Below, in pieces: positions 3,853-61,379 of a stretch of DNA of 64,000 nucleotides; the first letter of the stretch is position 1, and each line of letters begins with the position of its first letter. This DNA comes from Mustelus asterias (lineage: Eukaryota), in NCBI RefSeq assembly GCF_964213995.1, contig NW_027590156.1, forward strand, positions 496,001-560,000. The letters run 5' to 3'. A program made the translations under genes and the position numbers. Below the pieces are notes generated by a model that searched no databases, was not told where the DNA came from, and saw only the letters and a list, made by a program, of their open reading frames with translations.

Positions 3853-6645
3853 TACATAAGAACATAAGAACATAAGAAATAGGAGCAGGAGTAGGCCATC
3901 TGGCCCTTCGAGCCTGCCCCGCCATTCAACAAGATCATGGCTGATCTGAAGCAAATCAGTTCCACTTACCCGCCTGCTCCGCATATCCCCTAATTCCCTT
4001 ATTGATCAGAAAACTATCTCCCCGTGATTTAAACATATTCAACGAGGAAGCCTCCACCACTTCAGTGGGCAGAGAATTCCAGAGATTCACTACCCTCTGA
4101 GAGAAGAAGTTCCCCCTCAACTCTGTTCTGAACCGGCCCCCCCTTATTTTGTGGCTGTGCCCTCTAGTTCTGGTTTCCCTTCTAAGTGGAAAGAATCTCA
4201 CCACCTCTACCCTATCCAGCCCCTTCATTATCTTATATGTCTCTATAAGATCACCCCTCATCCTTCTAAACTCCAACGAGTACAGACCCAATCTGTTTAA
4301 TCTCTCCTCATAAGCTCCACCCCTCATCTCCGGTATCAACCTGGTGAACCTTCTCTGCACTCCCTCCAAGGCCAATATATCCTTTCGCAAATAAGGGGTC
4401 CAAAACTGCACACAGTACTCCAGTTGCGGCCTCACCAGTGCCTTGTACAGTTGCAGCAAGACCTCCCTGCTTTTATATTCTATCCCCCTCGCGATAAAGG
4501 CCAACATCCCATTTGCCTTCTTGATCACCTGCTGCACCTGCAGACTGAGTTTTTGCGATTCGTGCACAAGGACCCCCAGGTCCCTCTGCACAGTCGCACG
4601 ATGTAAATTTTCTCCATTTAAATAATATTCCAATTTACGATTATTTCTTCCAAAGTGGATAACCTCACATTTGCTAACGTTATATTCCATCTGCCAGATC
4701 CTCGCCCACTCGCTCAGCCTATCCAAATCTCTCTGCAAACTTTCCGCGTCCTCCACACAATTCGCTTTCCCACTCACCTTCGTGTCATCAGCAAACTTGA
4801 ATACCCTAGATTCAGTCCCCTCCTCCAGATCATCTATGTAAATGGTAAACAATTGAGGCCCCAGCACCGATCCCTGTGGCACGCCACTGGTCACCAACTG
4901 CCAACCAGAAAAGCACCCATTTATCCCAACTCTCTGCTTCCTGTTAGATAGCCAATCCCCAATCCACGCCAACACCTTACCCCTAACTCCGTGTACCCCA
5001 ATCTTCTGCAGCAACCTTTTGTGAGGCACCTTATCGAACGCCTTCTGGAAATCTAAAAACGCCACATCCACCGGTTTCCCTCTGTCAACCGCACTAGTGA
5101 CATCTTCATAAAGTCCAGTAGATTCGTCAAACACGACTTTCCCTTCATGAATCCATGCTGCGTCTGCTTGATCGAACCATTCTTATTCAGGTGCTCTGTT
5201 ATTTCCTCTTTAATAATGGACTCGAGCATCTTCCCAACTACGGACGTTAAGCTAACCGGCCTGTAGTTACCCGCCTTTTGTCTACTTCCTTTTTTAAACA
5301 GCGGCGTAACAGTAGCTGTTTTCCAGTCAGCCGGCACTACCCCAGAGTCCAGCGAATTTTGATAAATTGCTACTAACGCATCTGCTATTACCTCAGCCAT
5401 TTCTTTCAGTACCCTGGGATGCATTCCATCCGGGCCCGGGGACTTGTCTACCTTCAGTCCTATTAGTCTACCAAGCACCACCTCCTTAGTAACAGTAATT
5501 GTATTAAGGACCTTCCCTCCCACCAACTCTCGATCTCTAATATTCAGCAAAATATTTGTGTCTTCCACCGTGAAAACCGACACAAATAACTTATTTAAAG
5601 TCTCAGCCATTTCCTCGTTTTCCACTATTAAATCCCCCCTCTCATCTTCCAAGGGTCCAACATTCACTCTAGCCACTCTATTCCTTTTTATATACTTGTA
5701 AAAGCTTTTACTATCATTTTTTATATTTTGAGCTAGTTTAGTTTCATAATCTATCTTTCCTTTCTTAATCGCTTTCTTAGTCGTTCTTTGTTTTTCTTTA
5801 AAGCTTTCCCAATCCACTAATTCTCCACTATTTTTGGCCACTCTGTAAGCATCTGATTTTATTTTAATACTCTCCTTTATTTCCTTCGTTATCCACGTCC
5901 GGTTATCCTTTTTCTTACAGTCCTTCTTTATCACCGGAATATATTTTTGCTGAGTACTTAAAAAAATCTCCTTAAAAATCCTCCACTGTTCCTCAGCTGT
6001 CCTACCTACCAGTCTGCTCGCCCAGTCTACATGAGGCAATTCCACCCTCATCCTATCGTACTCCCCTCTGTTCAAGCAGAGGACACTGGTTTGGGACCCT
6101 ACTTTCTCACCCTCCTTCTGTATCAGAAATTCCACCATATTATGATCACTCATCCCAAGAGGATCCTTCACAAGAAGATCCTTAATCCTACCTGTCTCAT
6201 TGCACAGAACCAGATCCAAGATAGCTCGCTCTCTCGTAGGTTCTGTAACATACTGTTCAATGAAACAATCCCGACAGCATTCCAAGAACTCTTCCTCAAG
6301 CCCTCCACGTCCAATTTGAGTCGACCAATCAATATGTAGGTTAAAATCCCCCATGATTATTGCCGTTCCACTTTTGCACGCATCCATTATTTGCTTGCTT
6401 ATAGCCCTCCCCACCTTTAAGTTATTATTTGGGGGCCTACAGACCACGCCTACCAGTGTCTTTCTCCCCCTACTATTCCTTATCTCCACCCACAACGATT
6501 CCACGTTTTGCTCCTCAGAGCCTATGTCGTCTCTCACTACCGTCCTGATATTATCCTTTATTAACAAAGCTACCCCACCTCCTTTTTCTACCTGTCTATC
6601 CTTCCTAAATGCCTGATAACCCTGTATATTCAGTTCCCAGTCCCG
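3853..6645 (-). mobile_element. CR1 LINE, near-complete ORF2 (APE endonuclease + RT) with one frameshift near 5100
   Basis: ORFs 5053-6693 (MGDFN, SDHN, KSPGPDG) and 3956-5134 (LDFQKAFDKVPH, GVPQGSVLGP, FADDTK); (ACATAAGA)n 3' tail at ~3854-3878. Confidence 0.95.
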
Positions 6646-6879
6646 GTCTGGTGGATTAACAGAGATAGGTTCTGATGTAATGTAATGAGACAAATCCTAT
6701 GTAATATAAAAATAGATGGGATCAGATGTAACATAATCAGATCCGTGGTCTACTCTTGTACTAATTGAATGGTTATATAATTCGTGGACAGATAAGAAAC
6801 AGAGAGTGGAAATAAATCAGTCTTTTTCCGAGTGGCAGTCAGCGATTAGTGGGATACCGCAGGGTAACAACATTTTTAA

Positions 6880-19100: not shown

Positions 19101-20397
19101 AAACACAAGCAGACATGTTTATATCGCATAAAGTATATCACCTCTCTGAATCAACTCTCACAATCTGCCTGTATTTATTTCTATCCATCGATCATAGTGG
19201 TTTGTTGTGTTGGAGAGATCATCGTTGTTGCTAATAAGGTGCCAGAGAAGTTGGATAGCTTTCTTTTCCAAAGAAATGGGGAGCATTCATATAAGTTTAC
19301 AACTTTAAAAATAATTAAGTTGCCTCCAGTACTGTTGCTGGGCAGATTTGTTTATAAATAGGCCCCATTGACAATGCTATGAGTTTGAAGTTGGCTTGCA
19401 GCCAAGCGCTCAGTACTGAGGAAACAGATCTTTGAGTTTCTGAACAAACACCCTCAGATGCTTCCTGTAAATATCTTCTGGTATTTAGCAGCAGGTTGGA
19501 CTGCTGCCAATTACTGCCTTGGACAGATTAACGTGAATATTAAGGATAACATGGGACTTAGCCAGTTATACAATAAATGATTGATTCCAACAAGAAAGAC
19601 ACGTATTCAATGGTATTCATTCCAAACAAATATTTTAAATGAATGCACTGTTCATTATGTGATCAAACTGTATCAGAAACTAGTAAATTGGCTAGGTACT
19701 ATTTCATTTGTATAACGTCCAAATAAATGTTCTTCCAACAATTAAAGCCATTTTGTGAGCAACTTCATGAAGTGCACGAAAGAGGTTTTGATGTCCCCAA
19801 TCCCTCAGCCCAATGAGATCAGTGTATTAGCCCAAAATTAAAATAATTAAAAGTAAAAGAAAGTCATATAACTGCCTTGAACAGCGGGGATTCCTGGAAT
19901 ATTCTCAGTGTTCTACACCTCTTTAAAAATACAACGTCAATTATACGTGATTGGCACCATGTTCTGTTGTGCAGCATAACCTGATTTCGAATATTTAACA
20001 GTCCCTCTCAGAGCTGCCAATGAGTGAAGAAATGACCAGCTCATAACCTTGTTCAGTGGAAGATAAAACATTTACTCTTGTGATATTGTGAAAAATGCTG
20101 CAAAGTCCTGATATCCTGTATTCCCACGACGAATGAATGCTAGACAGCGGTGGCCAATGAAATGAGCTGTAATGATTGGGATGCTGAAGGAGAACTTTCC
20201 TGATCGCCGTGTTGGTTCTGATTCATTAATTTCTCTGTCAAAATCGGTTTCAATTTTATGTATCTCTGTCAACTCAATTAATTATAAGTCAACCAGGTTT
20301 CTTTCACTGTTAATTTTCACAGGGTTAAGGAGCTGTTGGGGAAATATAAGGTGTAACATTGTATCATATGAGGAGTTTCTTTTTTCAATTCATTCGT

Positions 20398-20700
20398 GGG
20401 CGGCACGGTGGCATAGTTGTTAGCACTGCTGCGGCACAGCGCCAGGGACCCGGATTCAATTCCAGGTTTGGATTTGCGTGGAGTCTCTGTCTGTGTGGAG
20501 TCTGCACGTCTTCCAATTGTCTGCCTATTTACTCACACGGTCCGAAGATGTGCCGCTTAGGTTGATTAGCGATGATAAATTCTTCCATGATGCCAAGGGA
20601 ATTAGCAGGGAATATACGTGGGGTGATGCGGAGAGGGCCTGAGTGGGAATGGTGTCAGTGCAGGCCTAATGGCCTCCTTCTGCTCTGTAGGGATTCTATG
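20398..20700 (+). mobile_element. tRNA-derived shark SINE
   Basis: GGGCGGCACGGTGGCATAGTTGTTAGCACTGCTG...GGATTCAATTCC. Confidence 0.8.
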
Positions 20701-21442
20701 GACATGGATGCCGCTGAATGATCAGCATTTATTGCCCACTCCTTGTCCGAGGGCAGTTGAGAGCCAGCCACATTGCTGTGGCTCTGGAATCACATGTAGG
20801 CCAGCCAGGTAAGGACTGCAGATTTCCTTCTCGAAAGGACATTACTGAAGACAATCGACAATGATATCATGGTCGTCAGTAGATTCCTAAGTCCAGACGT
20901 TTTTACTGAATTTAAATTCCGCCATCTGCCGTGGCGGGATTCGAAGCCGGATCCTGAGAACATTAGTTGAGTTTGTGGATTAATTGTATAGCGATAATAA
21001 CACTAAGCCATTGCTTCCCTTTTTCTTATATCCAGTCCCAAATTACACGGATAGCTATCCACACCTGAAATACAATCATCCCAGCATGTAGTTACATAAA
21101 TCGATAATAATTCTTCTAATTAATTAATATTTTGCTGCAATGTGTTAGAGACACAGAATTATTGCAAATCTGACTGACGTCTTTACACTGATAAGATAAT
21201 GTCACCTTGTTTATGTCTATTCCCTTGTGAAGGGGTGCAGAAATGAAGGTATTTAATTTACAATGAAATTGTTTATTTTATATAACAGATAATCAAATGC
21301 AATTTCACCTCTTGGACTTGCAGAGACATTACAATGGATCTCAATCTTACTGCCTCAGTATTAGTCTGTTTCTGGAATGTTCCAGTGTCAGCAATCAATT
21401 CACCGGGAGTAATCCTCGGTATTTTTGATAAATTTTATTTGA

Positions 21443-21735
21443 TTTCATTTGATTTATTATTATCACACATATTAGTACACAGTGAAAGTTATTGTTTCGT
21501 GTTCACTATATAGACAGAGCATACTGTACACAGGGAAGAAAGGGAGAGAGTTTAGAATGTAATGTTACAGTCATAGCTAGGGTGTAGAAAAAGATCAACT
21601 TAATGCGAGGTAGGTCCATTCAAAAGTCTGAATGCAGCAAGAAAGAAATTGTTTTTAACTCGGTTTATAAATGTCCTCAAGCTTTTGCATCAGCGCGATG
21701 GAAAAAGGCAAGAGAGTATGTTCGGGGTGCATGGC
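21443..21735 (-). mobile_element. LINE 3' fragment (Rex1/Babar-like, tentative)
   Basis: Recognised by eye as a common shark repeat 3' end (TTTATTATTATCACA...CAGTCATAGCTAGGGTGTAG...CCATTCAAAAGTCTGA); no coding confirmation. Confidence 0.45.
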
Positions 21736-21771
21736 GTTGTTTTTACATGTTTTTCTTTCATATTTTTAAAA

Positions 21772-21929
21772 GTGTCTAATTAGACGTTGTGTTGGCTCAA
21801 CCAGAGGCAGAAACCGGGCGTCCCTGAGGCTCCCTGAGACTGACCTGTAAAGCCATCGCGTGGCTTTACCCATGGCAGCAACTGGGTGTCAAGGTCCGAC
21901 AGGTCCCTGGACAGTGTTTGTAGTGTCTT
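21772..21929 (+). pseudogene. IgM VH pseudogene fragment (FR1-CDR1-FR2)
   Basis: GACGTTGTGTTGGCTCAACCAGAGGCAGAAACCGGGCGTCCC-TGA-GGCTCCCTGAGACTGACCTGTAAA...GTCCGACAGGTCCCTGGACAG = [22 protein letters not shown]...VRQVPGQ; stops, frameshift, no leader, truncated by CR1. Confidence 0.92.
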
Positions 21930-23700: not shown

Positions 23701-26281
23701 TTAAATCTTCCAGCAGATAAGGAGAATGTCATAAATGTTCAGAAAAATAGTAATTATTTTCACCAACGACCGTCCATTCACAATTTTATAAATGCATTCA
23801 CCAGTTCTCATTCATTCATAAAGATTAGTATATTTAACATTACTTTATGGGAGGTGGGCGACACTTTCTAGGCCAGCATTTGTTCTCCATTGCTAATTGC
23901 ATTCGGTAAAGTGGTGGTGAACCGCCTTGTTGAACCGCTGCAAAACCTGCAGAGTAGGTACTCCCATAGTGCTGTTAGGGAGGGTGCTCATGGATTCCGA
24001 CCCAGCGACAGCTTAGGAACGGTAATATATGTTCAAGTGGGGTTGATGTGTCTTGGAGGGGAATTTCCAGGAGGGGTTGTTCCACTTCACCAATTATCAT
24101 CAATTCATACAGATAAACAATTATTTCACCAATTATATTCAGTATTTTGATAAAAGCAAAATACTACGGATTCTGGAAACTGAAACAAAAACAATAAATT
24201 CTGGAAAATCTCAACAGGTCTGACAGCATCTGGGAAGAGAGAATAGAGCCAACATTTTGAGTCAGGATGACCCATTTTTATTTGGAGGAAATTGAAGTGG
24301 ATGATGAAATTTGGAAATGATAAGGTTGGATAGGGATTAGGAAGTTTTATTTAGGATATAGTTAGTGATTGAGGCGTTGATTAGGTTAGTTAGGATGGAG
24401 AAGTTGAATATGATATTTGGGATCGATATCTGAATTGATGTAACTTGTGTGCGGGTCGACATAGTGTATATCATTAAACAGTAACGATTTAAACTAGTCC
24501 CATCTCACAGGAAAGTGATGCAGCTTCTCTGACACCTTGTTAGAAACAATGATGATCTCTCCAACGCATCAGGAATACTCTGCCGAAGCACCATCCAGAC
24601 ACGAAAGGTTGGCTCTACTCTGTCTCCACAGAAGCTGTCAGGCCTGCTGCGATTTTCCAGCATTTTCTGTTTGTTTTCAATATTTCATCCTATACAACAT
24701 ACAATTGTAATTTGCTTCGTAGGATGTATTGACATTAACATTTATTGGCATCATATTGGCCTTTCTGTCACCAAGGAATAAAATCTGTCTCAGAATTCAG
24801 TGGGGAATGGAATTAATTCAGACCGAGGATAATGAACAGGTACCCAGCAGCCTCTGTTCTTCATTGACAAGTAATCACCTCATCATCACACAGAAAGTCC
24901 TGATACATAGCTGGAGTGTGTGATGATTTTCAAAGTGATGATATAAATGAAACTACCTGTACCTCATGTGAAGTTACTGAACCTTTAAATCCTGATTTAT
25001 TATTACACTGTTTTGGGAAGTAATGTAACACTTGTAGTTGTCCAGTGAGTCTCACAATATTTCTGTTGGTGCCTTATTTACTTTTCACCCTGTTACCTTC
25101 ACTAATTTGGGTGAGGGCATGTTGAGTGATTTGCTGCACGTGAAGAACCACATGTTTCAAATATTACAATCCTCCCTCCTCAAACTTAATCACGTTCACT
25201 CTTTTTATCTTGGATATGAAGATTCAGCATCAGCAGAGAAATGAACCATCCGAGCAGCAGGAATATCTCGTCCTTCTCTTCGTGAGGATCAGCGTGCTAA
25301 CTCCCGATAAACTCGTGATGGATTTCACCCAGACACTCTGGAAGAATTGAAGGTATTAGACTGACACAAATGGAATAAAGGAGATGATTCAATTTATGAA
25401 ATAATCAAGCACAAATATGGGAATGTAGAACAGCATTTTTCAATGCCATCTATCAATGCATCCATCAATCCATTAATTGAATGCTCAATCAAAATATTCA
25501 GGCATCAAACTGTCATTTATCCAAACATCATTCATTCAAATGTCATTCATTCCTGAATCAACACAGTAATACATTTATTGTTTGCGTAGATTGTGACATA
25601 ATATTAATTTAATTTATCCAGTGATCCAGAGACCCAGGACAATGATGTGGGGACAGGGATTTAAATCGGAGCATTGCAGCTGGTGGAATTTGAGTTCAAT
25701 TAATAAATCTGGAATAGATATTAATGGCGACCATTGGAACCTCTCTGATTCCCCAATGGACGAAATCTGCCATCGCTACCTGGTCTCACAAGAATGTGAC
25801 TCCTGACGGACAGCAAAATAGCTGACTCTTTCATATCTTCAGAAGTGGCCTAGAAAACCAGTCAGTTCAAGGGAATTTGGGACATGGAAAAAGTGCTGGT
25901 CTTTCCAACCAAACATGTCATGGAATGATAAAGGGAAAGAAAATACAAACATACATGTTCATGTATCGTCTCTCTGAGTCATCTCTTAGTTTGTCTGTAA
26001 TTCTTTCTATCCATCTATCACAATATCTTCATGTGTTGGAAAAATCATCATTGTTGCTAACAGGGTGCCAGAGAAGCTGCATGACTTTCCTTTCTTTAGA
26101 GATGGGAACAATTCATTTAGATTTACAACTTTAAATAATTAAAGTGCCTCCAGTCGTGTTACTGGGTAGATTTGTTTATAAATAGGCCTCATTGACAACG
26201 TGAAGTGTTTTAAGTTTTCTTGCAGCCAAATGGTCAGTACTGAGGAAAGAGATCTTTGATCTACTGCACAAACACCCACAG

Positions 26282-27948
26282 GGGCCATGTTTTTCAGGAA
26301 GAGAAGGTGTTACAGGCTAATAGGCTGGAGGAAATAGATGTTCGGAGGGAGGATGTATTGGCAGTTTTGAATAAACTGAAGGTCGATAAGTCCCCTGGGC
26401 CTGATGAAATGTATCCTAGGATTCTTTGGGAGGCGAGGGATGAGATTGCAGAGCCTTTGGCTTTGATCTTTGGGTCCTCGCTGTCCACGGGGATGGTGCC
26501 AGAGGACTGGAGAGTGGCGAATGTTGTTCCTCTGTTTAAGAAAGGGAATAGAAATGACCCTGGTAATTATAGGCCGGTTAGTCTGACTTCGGTGGTTGGT
26601 AAATTGATGGAAAAGGTCCTTAGGGATGGGATTTACGACCATTTAGAAAGATGCGGATTAATCCGGGATAGTCAGCACGGATTTGTGAAGGGCAAATCGT
26701 GCCTCACAAATTTGATAGAATTTTTTGAGGAGGTAACTAGGTGTGTTGATGAAGGTAGGGCGGTTGATGTCATATACATGGATTTTAGTAAGGCGTTTGA
26801 TAAGGTCCCCCATGGTCGGCTTATGATGAAAGTAAGGAGGTGTGGGATAGAGGGAAAGTTGGCCGATTGGATAGGTAACTGGCTATCTGATCGAAGACAG
26901 AGGGTGGTGGTGGATGGAAAATTTTCGGACTGGAGGCAGGTTGCTAGCGGAGTGCCGCAGGGATCGGTGCTTGGTCCTCTGCTCTTTGTGATTTTTATTA
27001 ATGACTTCGAGGAGGGGGCTGAAGGGTGGATCAGTAAATTTGCTGATGACACCAAGATTGGTGGAGTAGTGGATGAGGTGGAGGGCTGTTGTAGGCTGCA
27101 AAGAGACATAGATAGGATGCAAAGCTGGGCTGAAAAATGGCAAATGGAGTTTAACCCTGATAAATGTGAGGTGATTCATTTTGGTAGGACTAATTTAAAT
27201 GTGGATTACAGGGTCAAAGGTAGGGTTCTGAAGACTGTGGAGGAACAGAGAGATCTTGGGGTCCATATCCACAGATCTCTAAAGGTTGCCACTCAAGTGG
27301 ATAGAGCTGTGAAGAAGGCATATAGTGTGTTAGCTTTTATTAACAGGGGGTTGGAGTTTAAGAGCCGTGGGGTTATGCTGCAACTGTACAGGACCTTGGT
27401 GAGACCGCATTTGGAATATTGCGTGCAGTTCTGGTCACCTCACTATAAGAAGGATGTGGAAGCGCTGGAAAGAGTGCAGAGGAGATTTACCAGGATGCTG
27501 CCTGGTTTGGAGTGTCGGTCTTATGAGGAAAGGTTGAGGGAGCTGGGGCTGTTCTCTCTGGAGCGGAGGAGATTGAGGGGAGACTTAATAGAGGTTTATA
27601 AAATGATGAAGGGGATAGATCGAGTGAACGTTCAAAGACTATTTCCTCGGGTGGATGGAGCTATTACAAGGGGGCATAACTATAGGGTTCATGGTGGGAG
27701 ATATAGGAAGGATATCAGAGGTAGGTTCTTCACGCAGGGAGTGGTTGGGGTGTGGAATGGACTGCCTGCAGTGATAGTGGAGTCAGACACTTTAGGAACA
27801 TTTAAGCGGTTATTGGATAGGCACATGGAGCACACCAGGATGGTAGGGAGTGGGAAAGCTTGATCTTGGTTTCAGATGAAGGTCGGCACAACATCGTGGG
27901 CCGAAGGGCCTGTTCTGTGCTGTAATGTTCTATGTTCTATGTTCTATT
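26282..27948 (+). mobile_element. Young 5'-truncated CR1 LINE with uninterrupted RT ORF
   Basis: ORF 26256-27863 with KSPGPD, DFSKAFDKVPH, GVPQGSVLGP, FADDTK; (ATGTTCT)n tail; empty site in paralog at 19446-19465. Confidence 0.95.
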
Positions 27949-29339
27949 AGATGCTTCCTGTCAATAACTTTGAGCATTTGACAGCAGGCTGGATTGCTGC
28001 CAAACAATGTGTGGGACAGATTAGCGTGAACGTGAAGGACAAAATGGCATTCAGCCATTTAAACAATAAATGTTTCATTCCCACAAGAAAGGCACATTTT
28101 AAATCGTACTCATTCTATTCAAATATTTTCATTCACTGTCCTGTTCATTATGTGAGTAAATAGTATCGCAAAACAATAAAATGACCAGGTGGTTTTTCGT
28201 TTGTATAACTTCCAAGTAAATGCCATTCCAATAATTATAAATGAAATGCGAGAGAGAGATGTTGATGTTCCCAATTCCCCGGTCAATTGAGATCAGAGCA
28301 ATGGCAAAAATGCATCGAAATAATATTACAAGAACATTATAAAACTGACATGAAAAGCGAGGATTGCTGGAATATTCCGAAAGTTCTGTATCTCATTTAA
28401 ACAGCAGCGTCTCTTGTCCCTGATTTACACCGTGTTCTATTGTACAGTATAATCTGATTTCCATTCTTGAAGAGTTCCTCTCATAGCTGCCAATGAGTGG
28501 AGAAATGATCAGCTGATAACCTGATTCAATGGAAGATAATCCATTTATTCTTGTGATGTTTTGCAATGTGCAGCAAAGCCCTGATATCTTGTGTTCCCAA
28601 CACCAGCGAATGTTAGACAGCCGGTGGCCAATAGAGTGAGCTGCCACGATTTGGATGCTGAAGGAGAACTTTAATGATCTCCGTGTTCGTTCCGATTCAT
28701 TAACTTCTCTGTCAAAAGTCGATGTTACTTTTATGTTTCTCTGTCAACTCACTATTTAATTATCAGGAAGGCGGGATTCTTATTATTTTCAAAGGGCTGT
28801 CTTCGAGATTGGGGAAGTTTGACAAATATAAGGAGAAACATTGTATTGTGTGAGAGTTTCTTCTCATCTCCAATCCCAAATTGTACAGTGATAGCCATCC
28901 GCACTGTAAACGCAATCACTTTGTTCATACCTCGCATTTCGTTACAGAAATCGATAACAATTCTTTTGATCAATTATGCTTTATTATTGTGATGTGACAG
29001 AGACTCGGAATTGTTGCAAAATAGACTGACGGTCTCCTTATTTTCCAAAAATGTTATTTCAGCATTTTTAGATTTGTATTCTACTTGGGGGCGTGGTAAT
29101 AAAATCACCATATTTACAATTGAATTCGTTTTTTAAATAAAGAAATGATGAACTGCAATATCACCATCAGAAATAAGGGGAACAATACAATGAACATATT
29201 CAGCCAAACAAATATCCCGACACAGACAAAATGTCCATTTTAATATTAACGTAATGGGAGTCCATTCTGTTGGGTGTGGAAGGTGGGACGTGGATCCAGT
29301 CACCGCCTCCAGCAGGGAATCAACACGCGGCGCCGTAAA

Positions 29340-29367
29340 GCCGCCCCCTGCTGCAGGGTATTTAAAT
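29340..29367 (+). promoter_or_regulatory. VH core promoter: TATA-like box TATTTAAAT (29359-29367) preceded by a CTCF-like motif
   Basis: ~90 bp 5' of the leader ATG; GCCGCCCCCTGCTGCA is the reverse complement of TGCAGCAGGGGGCGGC. Confidence 0.6.
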
Positions 29368-29457
29368 GCCGCTCACTGGGACCGGAATCCAACAGTCTGG
29401 GAGCTGGTTTGTTCACTGAGTTCCTGACACAACCATTTCCCCCAATTTACCAGAAAG

Positions 29458-29503
29458 ATGAGGTCGGCGATTTCTCTCAGTTTGTTGCTGACTTTCTTAC
29501 CCG
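29458..29503 (+). CDS. IGHV: IgM heavy-chain leader exon (MRSAISLSLLLTFLP-G)
   Basis: ATG, hydrophobic signal peptide, phase-1 donor G|GTGAGT, 134-bp intron. Confidence 0.95.
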
Positions 29504-29637
29504 GTGAGTAGTTTTTTTTTTCATTGTCCAAGTCTCCCACTGTTACTGTCTCAGTCTTAGTTTATCTCTGAAATATTCCAAAGTAAGAAATCATTCCACC
29601 AGGATTAATCGTCGGGTTTTTTGATCTATTTTTACAG

Positions 29638-29942
29638 GTGTCCAGACGCAGGTTGTGTTGACTCAGCCAGAGGCAGAGACCGGGCGTCCCGGAGGCTCCC
29701 TGACACTGACCTGTAAAACCAGCGGCTTCGATCTTAGCAGCTACTACATGTGTTGGATCCGACAGGTTCCTGGGCAGGAATTGGAGTTGCTGTTTTGGTA
29801 CTACACTTCATCTGGCAACTACTACGCCCCAGCAATTAAGGATCGACTTACTGCGTCCAAAGACACTTCAAACAACATCTTCTCTTTGGAGATGACGAGG
29901 CTGAAGACCGAAGACACCGCCATCTATTACTGTGCAGGGGAT
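29638..29942 (+). CDS. IGHV: IgM VH gene segment
   Basis: TTTTTACAG acceptor; [97 protein letters not shown]; open frame. Confidence 0.97.
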
Positions 29943-29981
29943 CACAGCGAGAGGAACCAGGGATGGACCCGAACAAGAACA
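29943..29981 (+). other. VH 3' RSS, 23-bp spacer
   Basis: CACAGCG-23 nt-ACAAGAACA. Confidence 0.92.
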
Positions 29982-30350
29982 GCTCGAAAGGGAATTCAGC
30001 ATCTTTCATCATAACCTGAAGGTCAGTATTTGTTTTAAATGTATTAACGACAGTGATCAGAAGCAAAACACAAACCACTTCTGACAAACCTAACTTAGTG
30101 AAAATTAAACATTAAACCAAGAAAACACACAGTCATAATGGGCTGAGATTTTCACCCTGTTTATATTTACTGTTAACAGTTTCTGCAATTACAGACCTGG
30201 ATATAATGCTAGTTTTACTATTTCCGATACTTGCAGACGATGTTTCTAGATTGTGTTTTGTAATCTATTGCAGAAATTGTAAATTGCATCAGAAATATTC
30301 GTCTATTTTAAGTAAATATTGAGCGGCAGCACTGAACAGAGAGCGAGTGC

Positions 30351-30431
30351 AGTTTTTGTGCGGGTGTGTGTCACTGTGATAGGTACAGTGGGTCACAGTG
30401 CAGAGCACAGCGACATCCTCATGCAAAAACC
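30351..30431 (+). other. DH1 segment (coding 30379-30393, ATAGGTACAGTGGGT) with 5' 12-RSS and 3' 22-RSS
   Basis: AGTTTTTGT-12-CACTGTG | D | CACAGTG-22-GCAAAAACC; the typical shark D1 12/22 arrangement. Confidence 0.95.
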
Positions 30432-30744
30432 TCATGGAAAGAGATTGCTCAAACTGATAATCAGTACCACTGCAGGATTTTCAAAGTAAACGAGGCTTCA
30501 ATGATATAATGTGTAGAAGTAATATTAGTTTGGGAAAGGTATAAAAATCTTCTCGGCAAAATCTGTTTTGACCGATGTGCTCAATCTACATTGACGGTTT
30601 AGAAGCATTCCGATCCTCTTTATAAATGTAATGGCCAGAATATGCTGAAATAACTCACTCATTCGCTCTCAGAAGAGGAAGAGTCAGATTTTTGACAGAG
30701 CAGTGAAATTACATCTCTGTATTTTACAGTTAGCAGTCAGGCAC

Positions 30745-30772
30745 AGTAATTGTCATGCTGTGTCTCACTGTG
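30745..30772 (-). other. 12-bp-spacer RSS 5' of the (D)J segment
   Basis: AGTAATTGT-12 nt (CATGCTGTGTCT)-CACTGTG. Confidence 0.88.
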
Positions 30773-30825
30773 ATACCACAGCATGGGCTACTGGGGAAAA
30801 GGGACCATGGTGACGGTGACTGCAG
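30773..30825 (+). CDS. IGHJ: JH segment with D-like 5' extension (probable germline-joined D2-J): YHSMGYWGKGTMVTVTA
   Basis: WGxG motif, donor G|GTAAG at 30825/30826, directly abuts a 12-RSS. Confidence 0.93.
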
Positions 30826-33239
30826 GTAAGAACCATGCATTTATTTAGTAAGTGTTTTACTTGAGTTTTTGTTTTATCTTTTTTCGCGGTTTTATTAAAT
30901 CACTTGTTCACTGAAATGTGGTTTGGTGGATTCGGTGCTGAAAACCTTTAAAATGTTTCATGTGAAACTGCTTAAAATGGGGATTATAGAATTATACTGT
31001 TAATTGACAAAAGGTGATGCTGAATGATTCAGTCTCTGCTTGTTGTGATTTGGTATTTATCACCTGAGGACATTGTGTCGCTGGGTTACTTCATATGCCA
31101 ATCTTCTGTTAAACAGTTCGCCGTTTCCGCAATGTTTAATCTCGGTGACATCTGGTGGCTGCGAGTTGTACCATCTACTGCACAAGTGTTTGAAATCTAA
31201 CCCAATATTAACAAAATGTGGTAACGTTTCTGCATTAATGTTATGAACATGTTAATCACAATGCTGGTTTTGTTATGTCATTGTTGTGTTCACTAATTAT
31301 TAGTTACTTTAGTGAAAGGCGGATTGGCTGGATTTTAAATTGAGATTTTCTGCCCATGTGAAATTTGATTTTGTTGAAACTGCTTGTACAATTGAACTGC
31401 TTCTGCATGAAGCGGGGTTCAGTCCCTTCGTGGTGCGTTTTTCTTCTGAGGATGTTGTCTGTCTGGGTGACTTTGAATAAGTATAATTTGTGAAATGGTC
31501 TGGCGATTCTGCATTGTTTACACTTGGTGACACAGAGCTGTTACACGTTTTGTGATTGAAAACAAAGTCTGCGGGTTTTAACCTACTTGACGTGTGCCTG
31601 CAGACAGAAATCAGGCAGGCTTAATTGTATTTGTATTTTTTTAAAATCGTAAGTGATAATTGCAGGTTAAACTAAACCACGGTTTACGCTATTCGTCCAG
31701 AACATAGTTTGCCACTGCATTCACAATTTGGGATACATGCAATGTTTTACCTCTGTGGCACCTGACACCTGCAGCGTTAACCATCCAAATGTTTAAATAT
31801 GTTTGAAATCTGTTTGAAATATGACCCAATATGAATAGAATGTGGTAACGTTCCAATATGAATTTGTTGGACATATTCCACCTCCTCGCAATGCTTGCTC
31901 TTATTCCAGATTTCTGTTTAGTTTAGTCATTCATACATTTGGTGACGAGTTGGTTTGCTGGATTGGATATTGAAATTTTCTGGCAATGATATTTTGGATT
32001 TTGTTGAATGCATAATTGAGCTGCTTCTCCGTGAAACAAACTCATTCCCTCATTGATGTGTTTTGGTGTGTTTCTGTTGAGGAGGTTCTGCGGTTTGGTC
32101 ACTGAATGTTTAAACTGTGTGAAATGGTTTGTTGTTTCGGCATTGTTTCTGCATTGTTTAAACTCGGTGGCACTGAGCGGTTACACGTTTTCTGGTTGAA
32201 TGCAAGCAATCTATGAGTTTCAGAATCCTTGTAGGGAGAAAACTAGCAGGTTCTAAAAGAAATAAAATAAAGATGTATAGCATTTTTATAAATGTTAACT
32301 AACGTTTACAAATTAAAATAAATCATGTTTTACAACGCTCAATCGGACACTAAGTCGTTGCTGCAATCGCAAACTTCTCATTAACAAGTTTGAGAGTAAA
32401 ATTAGTATCAATCAAACAATTATTAATCGGTAATATAACTCCATATTCACCAAAGATTATTTTACATTAGTATTTCGCATTAGTCGGCTTTGATAGTTCT
32501 GCTATGCTTTGCAAAGTCGAAGGGAGTATTGAAATGAATAACAGTTTAATTGAAAGGAGGTTATTGATTTTCTGTTGTTGTAAGTTGATCATTGATCAAT
32601 TTGAATCAAACCGTTTGAATGAAATTGACAGACTGAACAGATCTGTCTGCTGGGCACTCGACTGTTGCACCGTTTATGCCTGTTCTGTTTCTGTGCGCGT
32701 GGTCACTGTATTGGGACCAGGAATCTGTTCCTTCACCTGTATTTCAGGGAGTGAAATTTGATTTATTTCTTCAATAAACTTGTATCTGTGAGAAATGTGA
32801 CAGTTTGACTCGATGTTTGACTCGGCGCCTCAGAAATATCATTCTTAAAGCATATTGTGACCATCAGAGAGAGCAGAAACTTCAGACAGACTGTAGAAGG
32901 AGATTTGGTTGATTTTTAGCCAGTGATGTACCGGCCTTGGGAATGTTCGATGGGCAAAAGCAAAGGAAGATTTACTGTATAGTACTCCATACCGGAGCAG
33001 TCCCTGACTTGTTCAGTAGGACAGTTGAAGAGTCAAATTCGTTTGCATCTTATTTTTAATCTTCTAAAGACATTTTAGAGTCATTTGGTTGGCAATAATT
33101 TCTAATTTTCCCTAATTGCTCCTTCAGAAAGTGTTGATATGAAATATCCTTGATAAACTGCAGTCCATGAGCTGCAGCCATCCGCCGTGTCGTTAGGCAG
33201 CAAGTTCCAGGATTTTGACCCAGCAACTGTAAAGGAATG

Positions 33240-36620: not shown

Positions 36621-36732
36621 CTGAAGTGAGGTCTGAAGACGGAGTGATGCCCAACTTCAGGAGCATGTCAATGGAGTGAGAGAGGTGTAGGGAAGCGCCG
36701 GGGGTTCTGGGCCAGGGAAAACGTCAAGTAGC

Positions 36733-53133: not shown

Positions 53134-56100
53134 AACAAAGAACAAAGAACAATACAGCACAGGAACAGGCTCTTCGGCCCTCCGAGCCCGCACAGCTCCC
53201 TGGTCCAAACTAGACCATTCTTTTGTATCCCTCCATTCCCACTCCACTCCTGTGGCTATCTAGATAAGTCTTAAATGTTCCCAGTGTGTCCGCCTCCGCC
53301 ATCTTGCCTGGCAGCGCATTCCAGACCCCACCACCCTCTGGGTAAAATACGTCCTTCTGGTATCCGTGTTAAACCTCCCCCCTCCCCCCCTTTCCCCCCC
53401 CCCCCCCTCACCTTGAACCTATGACCCCTCGTGAACGTCACCACCGACCTGGGAAAAAGCTTCCCACCTTTCACCCTATCTATGCCTTTCATAATTTTAT
53501 ACACCTCTATTAGGTCACCCCTCATCCTCCGTCTTTCCAGTGAGAACAACCCCAGCTGGAATTGCGAAGAGCATTGTCGGGCAATATAGCAGGATATAGA
53601 TAGGCTGGAAAATTGGGCGGAGAGGTGGCAGATGGAGTTTAATCCGGATAAATGCGAAGTGATGCATTTTGGAAGAAATAATGTAGGGAGGAGTTATACA
53701 ATAAATGGCAGAGTCATCAGGAGTATAGAAACACAGAGGGACCTAGGTGTGCAAGTCCACAAATCCTTGAAGGTGGCAACACAGGTGGAGAAGGTGGTGA
53801 AGAAGGCATATGGTATGCTTGCCTTTATAGGACGGGGTATAGAGTATAAAAGCTGGAGTCTGATGACGCAGCTGTATAGGCCACATTTGGAGTACTGCGT
53901 CCAGTTCTGGTCGCCGCACTACCAGAAGGACGTGGAGGCATTGGAGAGAGTGCAGAGAAGGTTTACCAGGATGTTGCCTGGTATGGAGGGTCTTAGCTAT
54001 GAGGAGAGATTGGGTAGACTGGGGTTGTTCTCCTTGGAAAGACGGAGAATGAGGGGAGATCTAATAGAGGTATACAAGATTATGAAGGGTATAGTTAGGG
54101 TGAACAGTGGGAAGCTTTTTCCCAGGTCGGAGGTGACGATCACGAGGGGTCATGGGCTCAAGGTGAGAGGGGCGAGGTATAACTCAGACATCAGAGGGAC
54201 ATTTTTTACACAGAGGGTGGTGGGGGCCTGGAATGCGCTGCCAAGTAGGGTGGTGGAGGCAGGCACGCTGACATCGTTTAAGACTTACCTGGATAGTCAC
54301 ATGAGCAGCCTGGGAATGGAGGGATACAAACGATTGGTCTAGTTGGACCAAGGAGCGGCACAGGCTTGGAGGGCCGAAGGGCCTGTTTCCTGTGCTGCAC
54401 TGTTCGTTGTTCTTTGTTCTTTACCCACTCTCTCCTCATAACTAAGCCCTTCATTACCAGGCAACATCCTGGTAAACCTCCTCTGCACTCTCTCGAAAGC
54501 CTCCACGTCCTTCTGATAGTGTGGCGACCAGAACTGGGCGCAGTATTCCAAATGCGGCCGAACCAACGTTCTATACAACTGCAACATCAGACCCCAACTT
54601 TTATACTCTATGCCCCGTCCTATAAAGGCAAGCATGCCATATGCCTTATTCACTACCTTCTCCACCTGTGACGTCACCTTCAAGGATCTGTGGACTTGCA
54701 CACCCCCAGGTCTGCGTATCTACACCCTTTATGGTTCTGCCATTTATCGTATAGCACCCCCCTACGGTACTTCTACCAAAATGCATCACTTTGCATTTAT
54801 CTGGATTGAACTCCATCTGCCATTTCTTTGCCTAAATTTCCAGCCTATCTCTATCCTGCTGTAGCCTCGGACAATGTTCCTCACTATCTGCAAGTCCAGC
54901 CATTTTCGTGTCGTCCGCAAACTTACTGATCATCCCAGTTACACCTTCTTCCAAATCGTTTATATAAATCACAAACAGCGGAGGTCCCAATACAGAGCCT
55001 TGCGGAACACCACTAGTCACAGGCCTCAAGCCGGAAAAAGCCCCTTCCACTACCACCCTCTGTCTTCTGTGACCAAGCCAGTTCTCCACCCATCTAGCCA
55101 CCTCCCTCTTAATCCCATGAGATCCAACCTTTTGCACCAACCTACCATGACGGACTTTGTCAAACGCTCTACTAAAGTCCATATAGGCGACATCCACGGC
55201 CCTTCCCTCGTTAACCATTCTAGTCACTTCATCAAAAAACTCCACCAGGTTAATGAGGCATGACCTCCCTCTCACAAAACCATGCTGACTATCGTTAATG
55301 AGCTTATTCCTTTCTAAATGCGCATACATCCTATCTCTAAGAATCCTCTCCAACAACTTCCCTACCACGGACGTCAAGGTCGCTGGCCTATAATTTCCTG
55401 GGTTGTCCTTCCTCCCCTTCATAAATAACGGGACCACATTAGCTATCCTCCAATCCTCTGGGACCTCACCTGTGTCCAGTGACGAGACAAAGATTTGCGT
55501 CAGAGGCCCAGCGATTTCAGCTCTCGTCTCCCTGAGCAGCCTTGGATAGATTCCATCAGGCCCTGGGGATTTGTTAGTCTTTATATTCCCTAAAAAACCT
55601 AACACTTCCTCCCTTGTAATGGAGATTTTCGCTAACCGGTCAACACTCCCCTCCGAGACACTCCCAGTCAACACATCCCTCTCCTTTGTGAATACCGATG
55701 CAAAGTATTCATTTAGGATCTCCCCTACTTCTTTGGTCTCTGAGCATAATTGCCCACTTTTGTCCCTGAGAGGTCCGATTTTTTCCCTGACAACCCTTTT
55801 GTTCCTAACGTATGAATAAAATGCCTTGGGATTCTCCTTCATCCTGTCTGCCAAGGACATTTCGTGACCCCTTTTTGCCCTTCTAATTCCTCGTTTGAGT
55901 TCTTTCCTACTTCCTTTGTATTTCTCCAGAGGTCCCTCCGTTTCTAGCTGCCTGGACCTAACGTACGCCTCTCTTTTCTTTTTGACCAATCCCTCAATTT
56001 CCCTGGTTATCCACGGTTCTCGAATCCTACCCTTCCTATCCTTCTTTTTTACAGGCACATGCCTATCCTGCAGCCCCAACAACTGTTCCTTAAAAGACTC

Positions 56101-58036
56101 CCACATGCCAGATGTGGATTTACCCTCAAACAGCCTCTCCCAATCAAGAGCTCCCAATTTCTGCCTAATCCCACTAAAGTTAGCCTTCCCCCAATCCAAC
56201 ACCTTACCCTTGGGATACCACTCATCCTTTTCCATCACTATCCTAAAGCTAACAGAATTGTGGTCACTATTTGCCACATGTTCCCCTACCAAAACTTTGA
56301 AGACCTGACCAGGCTCATTCCCCAGTACCAGGTCCAGCATAGCCCCCTCTCTAGTCGGGCTATCTACATATTGTTCCAAAGAACCTTCCTGTACGCATTT
56401 TACAAATTCCTGCCCATTCAGACTCCCAGCCCTACGCGATTTCCAGTCGAGACCAGGGAAATTGAAGTCTCCCACTACAACAACCCTATTTTTTCCTGCA
56501 CCTATCCATTATCTCCTGACATATCCGTTCTTCCACTTCCCTTGGGCTGTTAGGGGGCCTGTAGTATACCCCCAACAAAGTGACTGCGCCCTTCCTGTTT
56601 CTGAGCTCCACCCACAGTGACTCGTTACACGACCCCTCTGAATTGTCCTCCCTCTGCACCGCTGTAATATGCTCTCTAACTAATACTGCTACTCCCCCAC
56701 CTCTTTTGGCCCCTCCTCTGTCTCGCCTAAAACACTTGTACCCCGGAATATTCAGTTGCCAGTCCTGTCCCTCTTTCAACCAATTCTCTGTCACCGCAAC
56801 CACATCCAATTTCCTCGTAAGCATTAAGGCCCTAAATTCGCCTGCCTCACCTGCTACGCTCCTTGCATTGAAGTAGATGCACTCCAGACCTCCAGGCCCA
56901 GTGAGGTCATCCTCCCCCAGAGTGCTCTTCTTCTTTGCCAGCCTTGTCCTGGCCCCAAGCTCGTCCTCAGCCTCTACACTTGTAGACCTAATTTTTTGAT
57001 CCCCACCCCCCTGCCATATTAGTTTAAACCCACCCGAACTGCACGAGCAAAACTCCCAGCCAGGATATTCGTGCCCTTCCAATTTTGTTGTGACCCATCC
57101 TTCTTGTACAGTTGGCCTCCTCTCTTGAAAACTTCCCAGTGATCCAGGAATATGAAGCCCTCCCTCCTGGACCAGTCCTTTAGCCAAGCGTTCAATTGTA
57201 CTATCTCCCTATTCCTAGCCTCACTGGCCCTAGGCATTGGGAGCAGCCCAGAGATTGCCACCCTGGAGGCCCTACTTTTTAGCCTATTTCCCAACTCACT
57301 GAATTGCTCTCGTAGGATCCCCCTGCTCTTCCTATCTACGTCATTTGCACCAATGTTTACAATGGCATCCGTTTCTTTATCCTCCCCTTTTAATATGCCT
57401 CCTATCCGCTCGGAGACATCCAGTACCCCAACACCAGGTAGGCAGACTACCATCCTGAAGTCCTGTTCACACCCACAGAATCGCCTGTCCGTGCCTCTAA
57501 CTGACGCGTCCCCCACCACTATTGCTCTCCTAACCCCTCTCTTTCCTTTCCGGGCCACAGAGCCTGACTCTGTGCCAGTGACCTGGTCACTGTGGCTTAC
57601 CCCTAAAGAGTCATCCTCCTCCACACTATCCAAAACAATATACTTGTTTTGGAGTGGGACAACCACAGGTGACCCCTCCACTAATTGCTCACTCCCCTCC
57701 CCTCTCACACCTGTCGCCGAGCCCTTCCTATTATGAGAGACAGCCACTGGAGTACTCTCTGGTACGTTACCCTTATGACCTTTACTCCTCCTAACTGTGA
57801 CCCACGTGTCTTCCCCCTGAGGCCCCGGTGTAACTACTTGCCTATAACTCATGTCTATTTGTTTCTCATTCTCCCTGACTAGACTAAGGTCATCAAGCCG
57901 CTGCTCCAGTTCCCTGACGCGGTCCCTCAGGAGCTACAGTTCCACGCACCTGGCACAAATGTGAACCTTGGGGCGGCGAGGTGTTTCCAGGAACTCCCAC
58001 ATCCCACACCGAAAGCAACAAACTGGCCTATCACTC
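53134..58036 (-). mobile_element. Near-full-length CR1 LINE (SGNH-esterase ORF1 + frameshifted ORF2), TSD ATAAAG
   Basis: ORF1 57019-57852 (IVVGDASVRG...NIGAND), ORF2 pieces 56486-57187, 54832-56475, 54339-54701; (AACAAAG)n tail; ATAAAG at 53128-53133 and 58037-58042. Confidence 0.93.
53556..54419 (+). mobile_element. CR1 3' fragment inserted antisense into a related CR1
   Basis: ORF 53632-54342 plus own 3'UTR/tail; host sequence rejoins as ...AACCCCAG|TTTACCC... Confidence 0.9.
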
Positions 58037-60393: not shown

Positions 60394-61300
60394 TTACTCG
60401 TGAATTCTTTGGTGTCTAAGCAGGTGGAATGACTGAGAAAATCCCTTTCCACACTCGGAGCAGATGAATGGTCTTTCCCCAGTGTGAACTCGTTGGTGTC
60501 TCAGCGGGTTGGATGACCGAGTGCATCCCTTCCCACACTCTGAGCAGGTGAATGATCGCCTGAACCCAGCCCCACAGTGAGAGCACCCGAATGGTCTCTC
60601 ATCAGTGTGAACACGTTGATGGGACATCAGTTCACTAGAACTTTTATAGCACTTCCCGCAGTCTGAGCATTTAAAAGGTCTTTCGTCAGTGTGAACCCGT
60701 TGATGTGTCAGGAGGTCAGATGATTGAGTGAATCCCTTCCCACACTGAGAGCAGATGAACGGCCTCTCCCCAGTGTGAATGCGCTGGTGTGACACCAGGC
60801 TGGATGACTGAGTGAATCTCTTCCCACACTGAGAGCAGGTGAACGGCCTCTTCCCGTGTGAAGCCATTGGTGTCTCAGCAGGTGGGATAATTGAGTGAAT
60901 TCCTTCCCACACTCAGAGCAGGTGATTGGCTTCTCCCCAGTGTGAACATGCTGATGAGTACGTAGGTGGGATGACCGAGTGAATCCCTTTCCACACTCGG
61001 AATAGGTGAACAGTCTCTCCCCAGTGTGAACTCGCTGGTGTAACACCAGGTTGGATGACTGAGTGAATCCCATTCCACACTCAGTGCAGGTGAATGGCGT
61101 CTCCCCATGTGACTGCGCCGATGAGTTTCCAGCTGGGATGGGTAACTGAATTCCTTCTCACAGTCCACACGTTGCTGCGCTTTTTCCATAGAGTGACTGC
61201 ACTTATGTTTTGACAGGCCAGATGATCGGTTGAGGCCTCGTCCACACACAAAACATATGTATGGTTCCCTCCACCGTGAACGGTGTTTTTTCCTTCCACG
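60394..61300 (-). pseudogene. Tandem C2H2 (Kruppel-type) zinc-finger pseudogene
   Basis: HTGERPFxCxxCGKxFxQSSxLxxHQR fingers distributed over several frames (ORFs 60394-60912, 60708-61073, 60875-61312, 61081-61305); upstream region replaced by CR1. Confidence 0.9.
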
Positions 61301-61379
61301 TTCAAAAGCCACTGATATTCAGTTACAATAAATTGGATGAATCTGTCAGATTTTGATATGTTATTTATTTTCAGTTTCC

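What the first reader, a model, noticed from the sequence alone, without database searches (positions are those of the whole stretch)
30745..30825. IgM cluster with V-D-(DJ) architecture: JH carries a 12-RSS and a D-like 5' end (probable germline D2-J joining)
Seen: V-23RSS ... 12RSS-D1-22RSS ... 12RSS-ATACCACAGCATGG-GCTACTGGGGAAAAGGG(J). No second free D and no 22/23-spacer J-RSS is visible. The segment lies ~380 bp after D1, the spacing expected for D2. Established: elasmobranch IgM clusters are normally V23-12D1 22/23-12D2 12-22/23J, and germline-joined Ig genes occur in cartilaginous fish. Inference: RAG acted in the germline to fuse D2 to J while leaving V and D1 free. The fused segment is open (YHSMGYWGKG), still obeys the 12/23 rule with D1, and also permits direct V-to-DJ joining, giving a semi-fixed, short CDR3 repertoire. 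I cannot tell whether this exact configuration has been reported for IgM in this lineage.
Basis: partly seen in the sequence, partly recalled or inferred. Interest (0 to 1): 0.85.

Follow-up and report, generated by a model that had tools for sequence, protein, structure and literature searches.

The report
Shark antibody gene with pre-fused D2-J
One shark IgM heavy-chain gene cluster carries its second D segment already fused to J in the assembled genome, leaving V and D1 free to rearrange; this is one more form of the germline-joined antibody genes long known in cartilaginous fish.

Summary
The window carries one complete, apparently intact IgM minilocus: leader, V, D1, one J-bearing segment, Cmu1-4 and TM1. 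Its signals are V-23RSS, 12RSS-D1-22RSS and 12RSS-J segment. No free D2 and no 22/23-spacer J signal exist. Only 2 good 12-RSSs occur in 64 kb, against 0.08 expected.

Germline D2-J joining is the best reading (about 0.7).
- Contigs of other shark runs carry J with its own heptamer and a different, non-12-RSS flank. They stop matching the window at 30782/30783.
- The window's 12-RSS flank is multi-copy in those runs. The two listed contigs that carry it end at 30773 and 30775, just past the heptamer.

D2-J germline fusion is already in print inside "V D1-D2J" clusters of horned shark and little skate (PMC2193153). My searches found V-D-DJ only as a somatic intermediate (PMC2435157).

The scan noted a similar "pre-joined D(D)J" elsewhere in this genome (s1-892811). 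I could not check it.

Modest interest: a new member of a known kind.

The parts
29458..29503 (+). Leader exon (MRSAISLSLLLTFLP + 1 nt), donor GT at 29504. A TATTTAAA box lies at 29359.
29638..29942 (+). VH exon, open frame, ends ...TAIYYCAGD
   Evidence: translation; best hits are shark IgM VH (Mustelus asterias 86% over 53% of the query, Scyliorhinus torazame 80% and 69%, Chiloscyllium punctatum 71%)
29943..29981 (+). V 23-RSS (CACAGCG / 23 / ACAAGAACA)
30351..30378 (+). D1 5' 12-RSS (AGTTTTTGT / 12 / CACTGTG)
30379..30393 (+). D1 coding, 15 nt (frames IGTVG, *VQW, RYSG)
30394..30431 (+). D1 3' 22-RSS (CACAGTG / 22 / GCAAAAACC)
30745..30772 (+). 12-RSS in front of the fused segment (AGTAATTGT / 12 / CACTGTG). 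Inferred to be the D2 5' signal.
   Evidence: In one search this flank is multi-copy in four other runs, and the listed contigs X1 record 6 and X10 record 13 end at 30773 and 30775.
30773..30777 (+). ATACC: inferred D2 remnant and/or junctional nucleotides. The upper bound of the non-J part is 30781.
   Evidence: J-type contigs stop matching at 30782/30783 and carry AC as the first J bases after their heptamer. Flank-type contigs match through 30773-30775.
30778..30825 (+). J part (AC AGC ATG GGC TAC TGG GGA AAA GGG ... GCA G), donor GT at 30826
   Evidence: P0011 residues 71-86 match 30780-30827 at 87.5%.
38551..38865 (+). Cmu1 exon (approximate ends), open
39205..39525 (+). Cmu2 exon (approximate ends), open
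40520..40840 (+). Cmu3 exon (approximate ends), open
41660..42055 (+). Cmu4 exon with secretory tail (…[17 protein letters not shown], then stop)
45544..45669 (+). TM1 exon (approximate ends)
   Evidence: P0020 residues 235-276, 74%

Best explanation
This is a shark IgM minilocus in the form V - D1 - D2J - Cmu. In an ancestor's germ line, RAG cut at the D2 3' 12-RSS and at the J 22/23-RSS. The two coding ends were joined and the D2-J interval was lost with its signal joint.

The product keeps the D2 5' 12-RSS, about 5 nt of D2 or junction (ATACC) and an untrimmed J.

The fused segment carries a 12-RSS, so the 12/23 rule still allows D1 (22-RSS) to join it and also V (23-RSS) to join it directly. 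The cluster therefore needs one or two somatic joins instead of three. The C-terminal half of CDR3 is then largely fixed as (Y)HSMGYWGKG.

Shown: the signal layout, the open frames and the difference from J flanks in other sharks. Inferred: the D2 origin of the flank, RAG as the agent, germline fixation and use in B cells.
For: 1. Layout and statistics of the signals.

2. In one search I laid contigs of four runs (X1, X2, X10, X15) on 29300-31300 at 80% likeness or more.
- J-type contigs lose the match just 5' of 30782 (X1, 3 contigs) and 30783 (X2, 2 contigs).
- There they carry a heptamer directly in front of J: CACTGTG + ACGC in X1, CACAGTG + ACCCT in X2.
- Their upstream letters are unlike the window. 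Where a 12-RSS nonamer would sit, 0 of the 7 (X1) and 0 of the 6 (X2) visible letters match it.
- X15 record 22 (722 letters) aligns only from 30789 on. It has 368 more letters on the upstream side that fit nothing in the stretch.

3. The window's own flank is a common cluster part in those runs.
- Bin 30707-30773 has summed depth 4698 in X10, against 5641-6213 for the D1 bins.
- 24 contigs (X10) and 20 (X15) cover 30712.
- The two listed contigs on this flank end at 30773 and 30775, right after the heptamer.

4. The relatives' J-flank word is absent from the whole window at up to 3 mismatches.

5. The J start is consistent with a cut at the heptamer border. Relatives' J begins AC. Mustelus P0011 reads DSMGYWGQG.

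6. The 379-nt spacing from D1 fits the reported spacing: 250-500 bp in PMC5192425 and 300-400 bp in the abstract of PMC2192082.

7. All exons are open, including Cmu1-4 and TM1.

8. There is precedent for RAG-type germline joining in sharks, including D2J (PMC2193156; PMC2193153).
Against: - No contig shown to me carries this flank followed by a D2 and a 3' signal. Its identity as D2 rests on position, RSS type and copy number. Only 32 of 1883 laid pieces and 24 of 309 loose ends were listed.
- All four runs differ from the window at many fixed positions. None holds this cluster itself, so germline status in the source animal is untested.
- The organisms of the runs are coded. I cannot say whether they are the same species.
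- The nonamer is weak (6 of 9, with two mismatches in the A-tract), so its efficiency is unknown.
- Only about 5 nt of D2 remain, too few to identify D2 by sequence.
- No expression evidence. No listed run is on record as RNA.
Confidence: 0.7

Rival explanations
1. Germline hybrid joint. RAG cut at the D2 5' 12-RSS and at the J RSS, and the 12-RSS signal end was joined to the J coding end. D2 and the interval were lost, and ATACC is junctional addition rather than D2.
For: J appears untrimmed and only 5 nt lie between heptamer and J. A germline hybrid joint that swapped RSS types is documented in a shark cluster (PMC2193153, passages).
Against: Flank-type contigs of other runs still match the window for 1 to 3 nt past the heptamer (A, ATA, records 6 and 13). 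This suggests the first bases are D2-derived, but it is weak evidence. Standard coding joints are the usual outcome.
Confidence: 0.08
2. Ancestral or lineage-typical one-D cluster. J has always carried a 12-RSS here (a TCR-beta-like V23 / 12-D-23 / 12-J layout) and no fusion took place.
For: Six codons before the J tryptophan is a normal J length. The 12/23 layout is self-consistent.
Against: J in X1 and X2 contigs has another heptamer and flank, with no 12-RSS nonamer. The window's flank is multi-copy there, but the listed contigs end at the heptamer rather than running into J. An unchecked scan note reports a full V-D-D-J-Cmu cluster in this genome (s1-890467).
Confidence: 0.08
3. Deletion not made by RAG (replication slippage or end joining) that happened to remove the D2 3' part, the interval and the J signal.
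For: It cannot be excluded from one sequence. No P nucleotides are visible.
Against: The 3' edge of the deletion falls within 0-4 nt of the J heptamer border as seen in relatives. That is the expected site of RAG cleavage.
Confidence: 0.06
4. Somatic one-step intermediate (V-D-DJ, as seen in shark lymphocytes and thymocytes) or an assembly artefact taken into the reference.
For: V-D-DJ is a real somatic configuration in nurse shark (PMC2435157, passages). No read set of the source animal was available.
Against: Any one somatic junction is rare in a cell population and should not win an assembly consensus (inference). The 64-kb window has no N. The scan notes several other joined forms in this genome (unchecked).
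Confidence: 0.05

Closest known systems
Partially germline-joined IgM clusters of horned shark and little skate (VD-J, VDD-J, V D1-D2J / VD-DJ)
   Same: Cluster-type IgH. Joining at RSS borders in the germ line. The D2J fusion itself occurs in the VD-DJ form (PMC2193153; PMC5192425).
   Different: Here V and D1 are both still free, so the cluster remains a rearranging gene with two usable 12/23 pairs. The reviews I read list VD-J, VD-DJ, VDD-J and VDJ, but not V-D-DJ as a germline form.
Somatic V-D-DJ ('1R') intermediates in nurse shark B cells and thymocytes
   Same: Identical configuration and mechanism: D2-to-J joining within one minilocus (PMC2435157).
   Different: Those are somatic and rare per junction. 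This one sits in a genome assembly.
Fully germline-joined VDJ IgM genes (nurse shark IgM1gj; Mustelus asterias gene model P0011)
   Same: RAG-type joining in the germ line. P0011 shares the J motif SMGYWG and a Cmu1 79% identical to the window's (PMC4279169).
   Different: Those have a fixed binding site and need no RAG. The window's cluster still needs one or two joins.
TCR-beta/delta-type signal layout (V-23, 12-D-23, 12-J)
   Same: After the fusion the cluster has exactly this order of spacers. The TCR layout itself is recalled, not tested here.
   Different: It is an IgM cluster. The resemblance is a by-product of losing D2, not homology.

Membership tests
Cartilaginous-fish IgM minilocus (cluster-type IgH) | Leader + VH exon, D and J within about 1-2 kb, then Cmu1-4, secretory tail and TM exon, all on one strand | tested here: met
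   V hits are shark IgM VH. Cmu1 is 79% identical to Mustelus P0011.
Cartilaginous-fish IgM minilocus (cluster-type IgH) | Canonical four segments V-D1-D2-J with signals 23 / 12-22 / 12-12 / 23 | tested here: not met
   Only three segments. J carries a 12-RSS. No free D2. The canonical spacer order is partly recalled. The V-D1-D2-J order is in PMC5192425.
Germline-joined (RAG-rearranged) Ig gene of cartilaginous fish | Two segments abut with loss of both facing signals and of the interval, the junction lying at the coding borders | tested here: met
   No J-side signal or interval in the window. J in other runs has its heptamer exactly where the match to the window ends.
Germline-joined (RAG-rearranged) Ig gene of cartilaginous fish | A closely related unjoined cluster shows the flanks to be homologous and the interval to be precisely missing | tested here: inconclusive
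Germline-joined (RAG-rearranged) Ig gene of cartilaginous fish | Present in non-lymphoid DNA or in several individuals | not testable with these tools
   No run held more than 0.09 of the words. None of the four laid runs held this cluster itself.
Functional rearranging gene | Transcripts with CDR3 ending in HSMGYWGKG, spliced to this Cmu1 | not tested
   No listed run is on record as RNA.

The most novel reading that the evidence does not exclude
The cluster is a working, RAG-competent V-D-DJ gene that is fixed in the species. It would be a living example of how a germline coding joint at once removes a D segment and changes the J signal from 23 to 12. That turns an IgH-type layout into a TCR-beta-like one. 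It would feed a short, semi-fixed CDR3 repertoire (possibly used early in life) through one-step V-to-DJ joining.
Probability: 0.25. Interest if true: 0.6.

Novelty: new member of a known kind. Interest (0 to 1): 0.4.

Why it matters
Germline-joined antibody genes are the main evidence that RAG has reshaped antigen-receptor loci in germ cells.

A cluster with only D2-J fused is still rearranging. It shows a simple route by which the number of D segments, and the spacer type on J, can change in evolution.

It also predicts a testable class of short CDR3s with a fixed C-terminal half.

The mechanism and the D2J fusion itself are already documented, so the gain is incremental.

Tried and rejected

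**Paralog inside the window.** Self-BLAST of 28000-32500 against the window found only a truncated psiV module (19521-21914) and an intron duplication. There was no second D/J region.

**Scan notes.**
- The genome-wide look-up gave titles only.
- One word look-up also gave titles only; the other was blank.
- The look-up by sequence was blank.

**Public collections.**
- A J-coding pattern in metagenome contigs gave 0 hits.
- A V-profile scan there gave 2 loci, both only 44-45% identical. They are not shark and may be another vertebrate or human. I did not open, compare or search them further.

**Sequencing runs.** No run held more than 0.09 of the sampled words. The four laid runs hold relatives or paralogs, not this cluster.

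**Second protein search.** A search with P0011 gave J peptides of other sharks (SLGYWGQG, AKDYWGQG, FDLWGQG). It gave no protein ending YHSMGYWGKG.

**Cryptic RSS rejected.** CACAGCA at 30777-30783 could be a D2 3' heptamer. But the word 12 nt downstream (GAAAAGGGA) matches the nonamer consensus at only 3 of 9 positions, by my own count.

**Papers not held or incomplete.**
- PMC4874517 and PMC454840 are not held.
- PMC2191167 is held only as abstract and references.
- Supplements were closed and not requested. Table 1 and the supplementary figures of PMC2435157, and the 1988-1993 Litman papers, may list germline V-D-DJ clusters that I could not see.

**Print claim.** "V-D-DJ not listed as a germline form" rests on searches, and on passages read.

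**Spliced model.** Exons were translated apart.

Full report
**What is there**

The window holds one complete IgM minilocus on the + strand.
- The leader exon is 29458-29503 and the VH exon is 29638-29942, which ends ...TAIYYCAGD.
- V is followed by a 23-RSS.
- D1 (15 nt, 30379-30393) lies 436 nt further on, with a 12-RSS on its 5' side and a 22-RSS on its 3' side.
- Another 379 nt on, a 12-RSS (30745-30772) abuts a 53-nt coding segment (30773-30825). This segment reads YHSMGYWGKGTMVTVTA and ends in a splice donor.
- Cmu1, Cmu2, Cmu3, Cmu4 with the secretory tail, and TM1 follow between 38.55 and 45.67 kb. All are open.
- The V exon's best protein matches are shark IgM VH. Mustelus asterias is 86% identical over 53% of the query, Scyliorhinus torazame 80% and 69%, and Chiloscyllium punctatum 71%.
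- The animal is therefore a shark, probably a carcharhiniform. The species is not known to me.

**Is the observation more than chance?**

Yes.
- A perfect heptamer with a 12-nt spacer and a nonamer of at least 6 of 9 occurs twice in the window on both strands. The two sites are the D1 5' side and the J-bearing segment.
- 200 shuffles gave a mean of 0.08.
- No other spacer length from 10 to 25 gives a nonamer-like word in front of the J segment. Spacers 22 and 23 score 2 of 9.
- No second D with paired signals lies between D1 and J (sequence read).

**What the fused segment is**

The decisive comparison would be with canonical clusters. I therefore used the single read-laying run.

No public run held more than 0.09 of the sampled words of 29000-32000. 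I laid contigs of four runs from four studies (X1, X2, X10, X15) on 29300-31300 at 80% likeness or more. The numbers laid were 201, 384, 786 and 469 contigs. All four show many fixed differences from the window, so they represent paralogs or related species, not this cluster.

Three results bear on the question.

1. J-type contigs stop matching just 5' of 30782 (X1, 3 contigs) and 30783 (X2, 2 contigs).
   - The unmatched letters end in a heptamer followed by 4-5 J bases: ...GTGACACTGTGACGC in X1 and ...GTAACACAGTGACCCT in X2.
   - J in those genomes therefore has its own signal and a flank unlike the window's.
   - Where a 12-RSS nonamer would sit, none of the visible letters fit (0 of 7 and 0 of 6).
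   - X15 record 22 has 368 further letters upstream of 30789 that fit nothing in the stretch.
2. The window's 12-RSS flank is itself a common part of clusters in those runs.
   - Its summed depth is similar to that of the D1 region: 4698 against 5641-6213 in X10.
   - 24 contigs (X10) and 20 contigs (X15) cover 30712.
   - The two listed contigs on it end at 30773 and 30775, just after the heptamer, instead of running into J.
3. The relatives' J-flank word is absent from the whole window.

Together these results say that ordinary clusters carry this flank and, separately, a J with another signal. In the window the two are abutted. This is what a D2-J coding joint predicts.

**Where the junction lies**

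- J in the relatives begins AC directly after the heptamer.
- The Mustelus joined gene model P0011 reads ...CDSMGYWGQGTMVTVTA and aligns to 30780-30827.
- The window's J therefore most likely begins at 30778 (AC AGC ATG GGC TAC TGG). It is untrimmed.
- Only ATACC (30773-30777) is left for D2 plus any added bases. The upper bound of the non-J part is 30781.

**How it works (inferred)**

- The 12/23 rule allows V (23) to D1 (12), D1 (22) to D2J (12), and V (23) directly to D2J (12).
- The cluster needs one or two joins instead of three. It loses the D2-J junction as a source of diversity and fixes the C-terminal half of CDR3.
- The nonamer AGTAATTGT has two mismatches in the A/T tract, so efficiency may be reduced.
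- Nothing here shows expression.

**Rivals**

- A germline hybrid joint (12-RSS signal end joined to the J coding end) would give the same layout without any D2 bases. The 1-3 nt of continued match past the heptamer in flank-type contigs argues weakly against it.
- An ancestral one-D cluster is contradicted by the J flanks of the relatives. It is not formally excluded, because I saw no contig with flank, D2 and 3' signal. Only 32 of 1883 pieces and 24 of 309 loose ends were listed.
- A deletion not made by RAG is unlikely, because its 3' edge lies at the heptamer border.
- A somatic V-D-DJ intermediate or an assembly artefact is unlikely on general grounds, but it is untested.

**Comparison with what is known**

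- Reviews list partly and fully joined IgM clusters: VD-J, VD-DJ and VDJ (PMC5192425, passages; PMC4279169, passages).
- Lewis and Wu list V DD-J, VDJ and V D1-D2J clusters in horned shark and little skate, and a germline hybrid joint that swapped signal types (PMC2193153, passages).
- Lee et al. argue for RAG action in germ cells (PMC2193156, passages).
- V-D-DJ appears in my searches only as a somatic one-rearrangement intermediate in nurse shark (PMC2435157, passages; searches).
- So the D2J fusion and its mechanism are known. A germline cluster with only that fusion is not listed in what I could read. The primary papers of 1988-1993 and all supplements were out of reach.
- The scan's own unchecked notes report, elsewhere in this genome, a canonical V-D-D-J-Cmu cluster, a pre-joined VD, a pre-joined D(D)J behind a free V, and joined VDJ genes. 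This genome evidently holds a range of joined forms.

**Verdict**

- It is a new member of a known kind, of modest interest.

Noticed in passing
window 29745-29800 (V exon): The V domain has a Cys in YYMCWIRQ and an FR2 reading GQELELLF, where eight other shark VH have GQGLEWLV-like residues.
   Followed up: partly
window 19521-21914: A duplicated V-upstream module with a truncated pseudo-V fragment (21761-21914, 77% to 29627-29777). It stops after FR2 and has no D or J behind it.
   Followed up: partly
window 31187-31560 and 31811-32200: Direct duplication of about 390 nt at 67% identity inside the J-Cmu intron.
   Followed up: no
window 36700-37900: Low-complexity block just 5' of Cmu1, with GC 0.54 and strong AT skew.
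   Followed up: no
protein P0018: A 132-aa protein filed under Salmonella enterica, on a 480-bp contig, is 81% identical to shark IgM and reads as spliced J-Cmu1-Cmu2. It is most likely shark cDNA contamination in a bacterial assembly.
   Followed up: no
run X1, joints 30381->30791 and 29937->30783: In one coded run, single contigs join the start of D1 (30381) to J, and the V end to J. The letters between are unknown. These are joined or rearranged cluster forms in a relative.
   Followed up: no
window 30538-30648: Contigs of X10 (2) and X15 (1) skip 111 nt here. The window may carry an insertion in the D1-D2 interval relative to many paralogs.
   Followed up: no
window 3956-6693 (-), 26256-27863 (+), 54832-56475 (-), 61740-63716 (+), 60394-61312 (-): Several LINE-type reverse-transcriptase ORFs flank the cluster, and C2H2 zinc-finger ORFs lie at 60.4-61.3 kb.
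   Followed up: no
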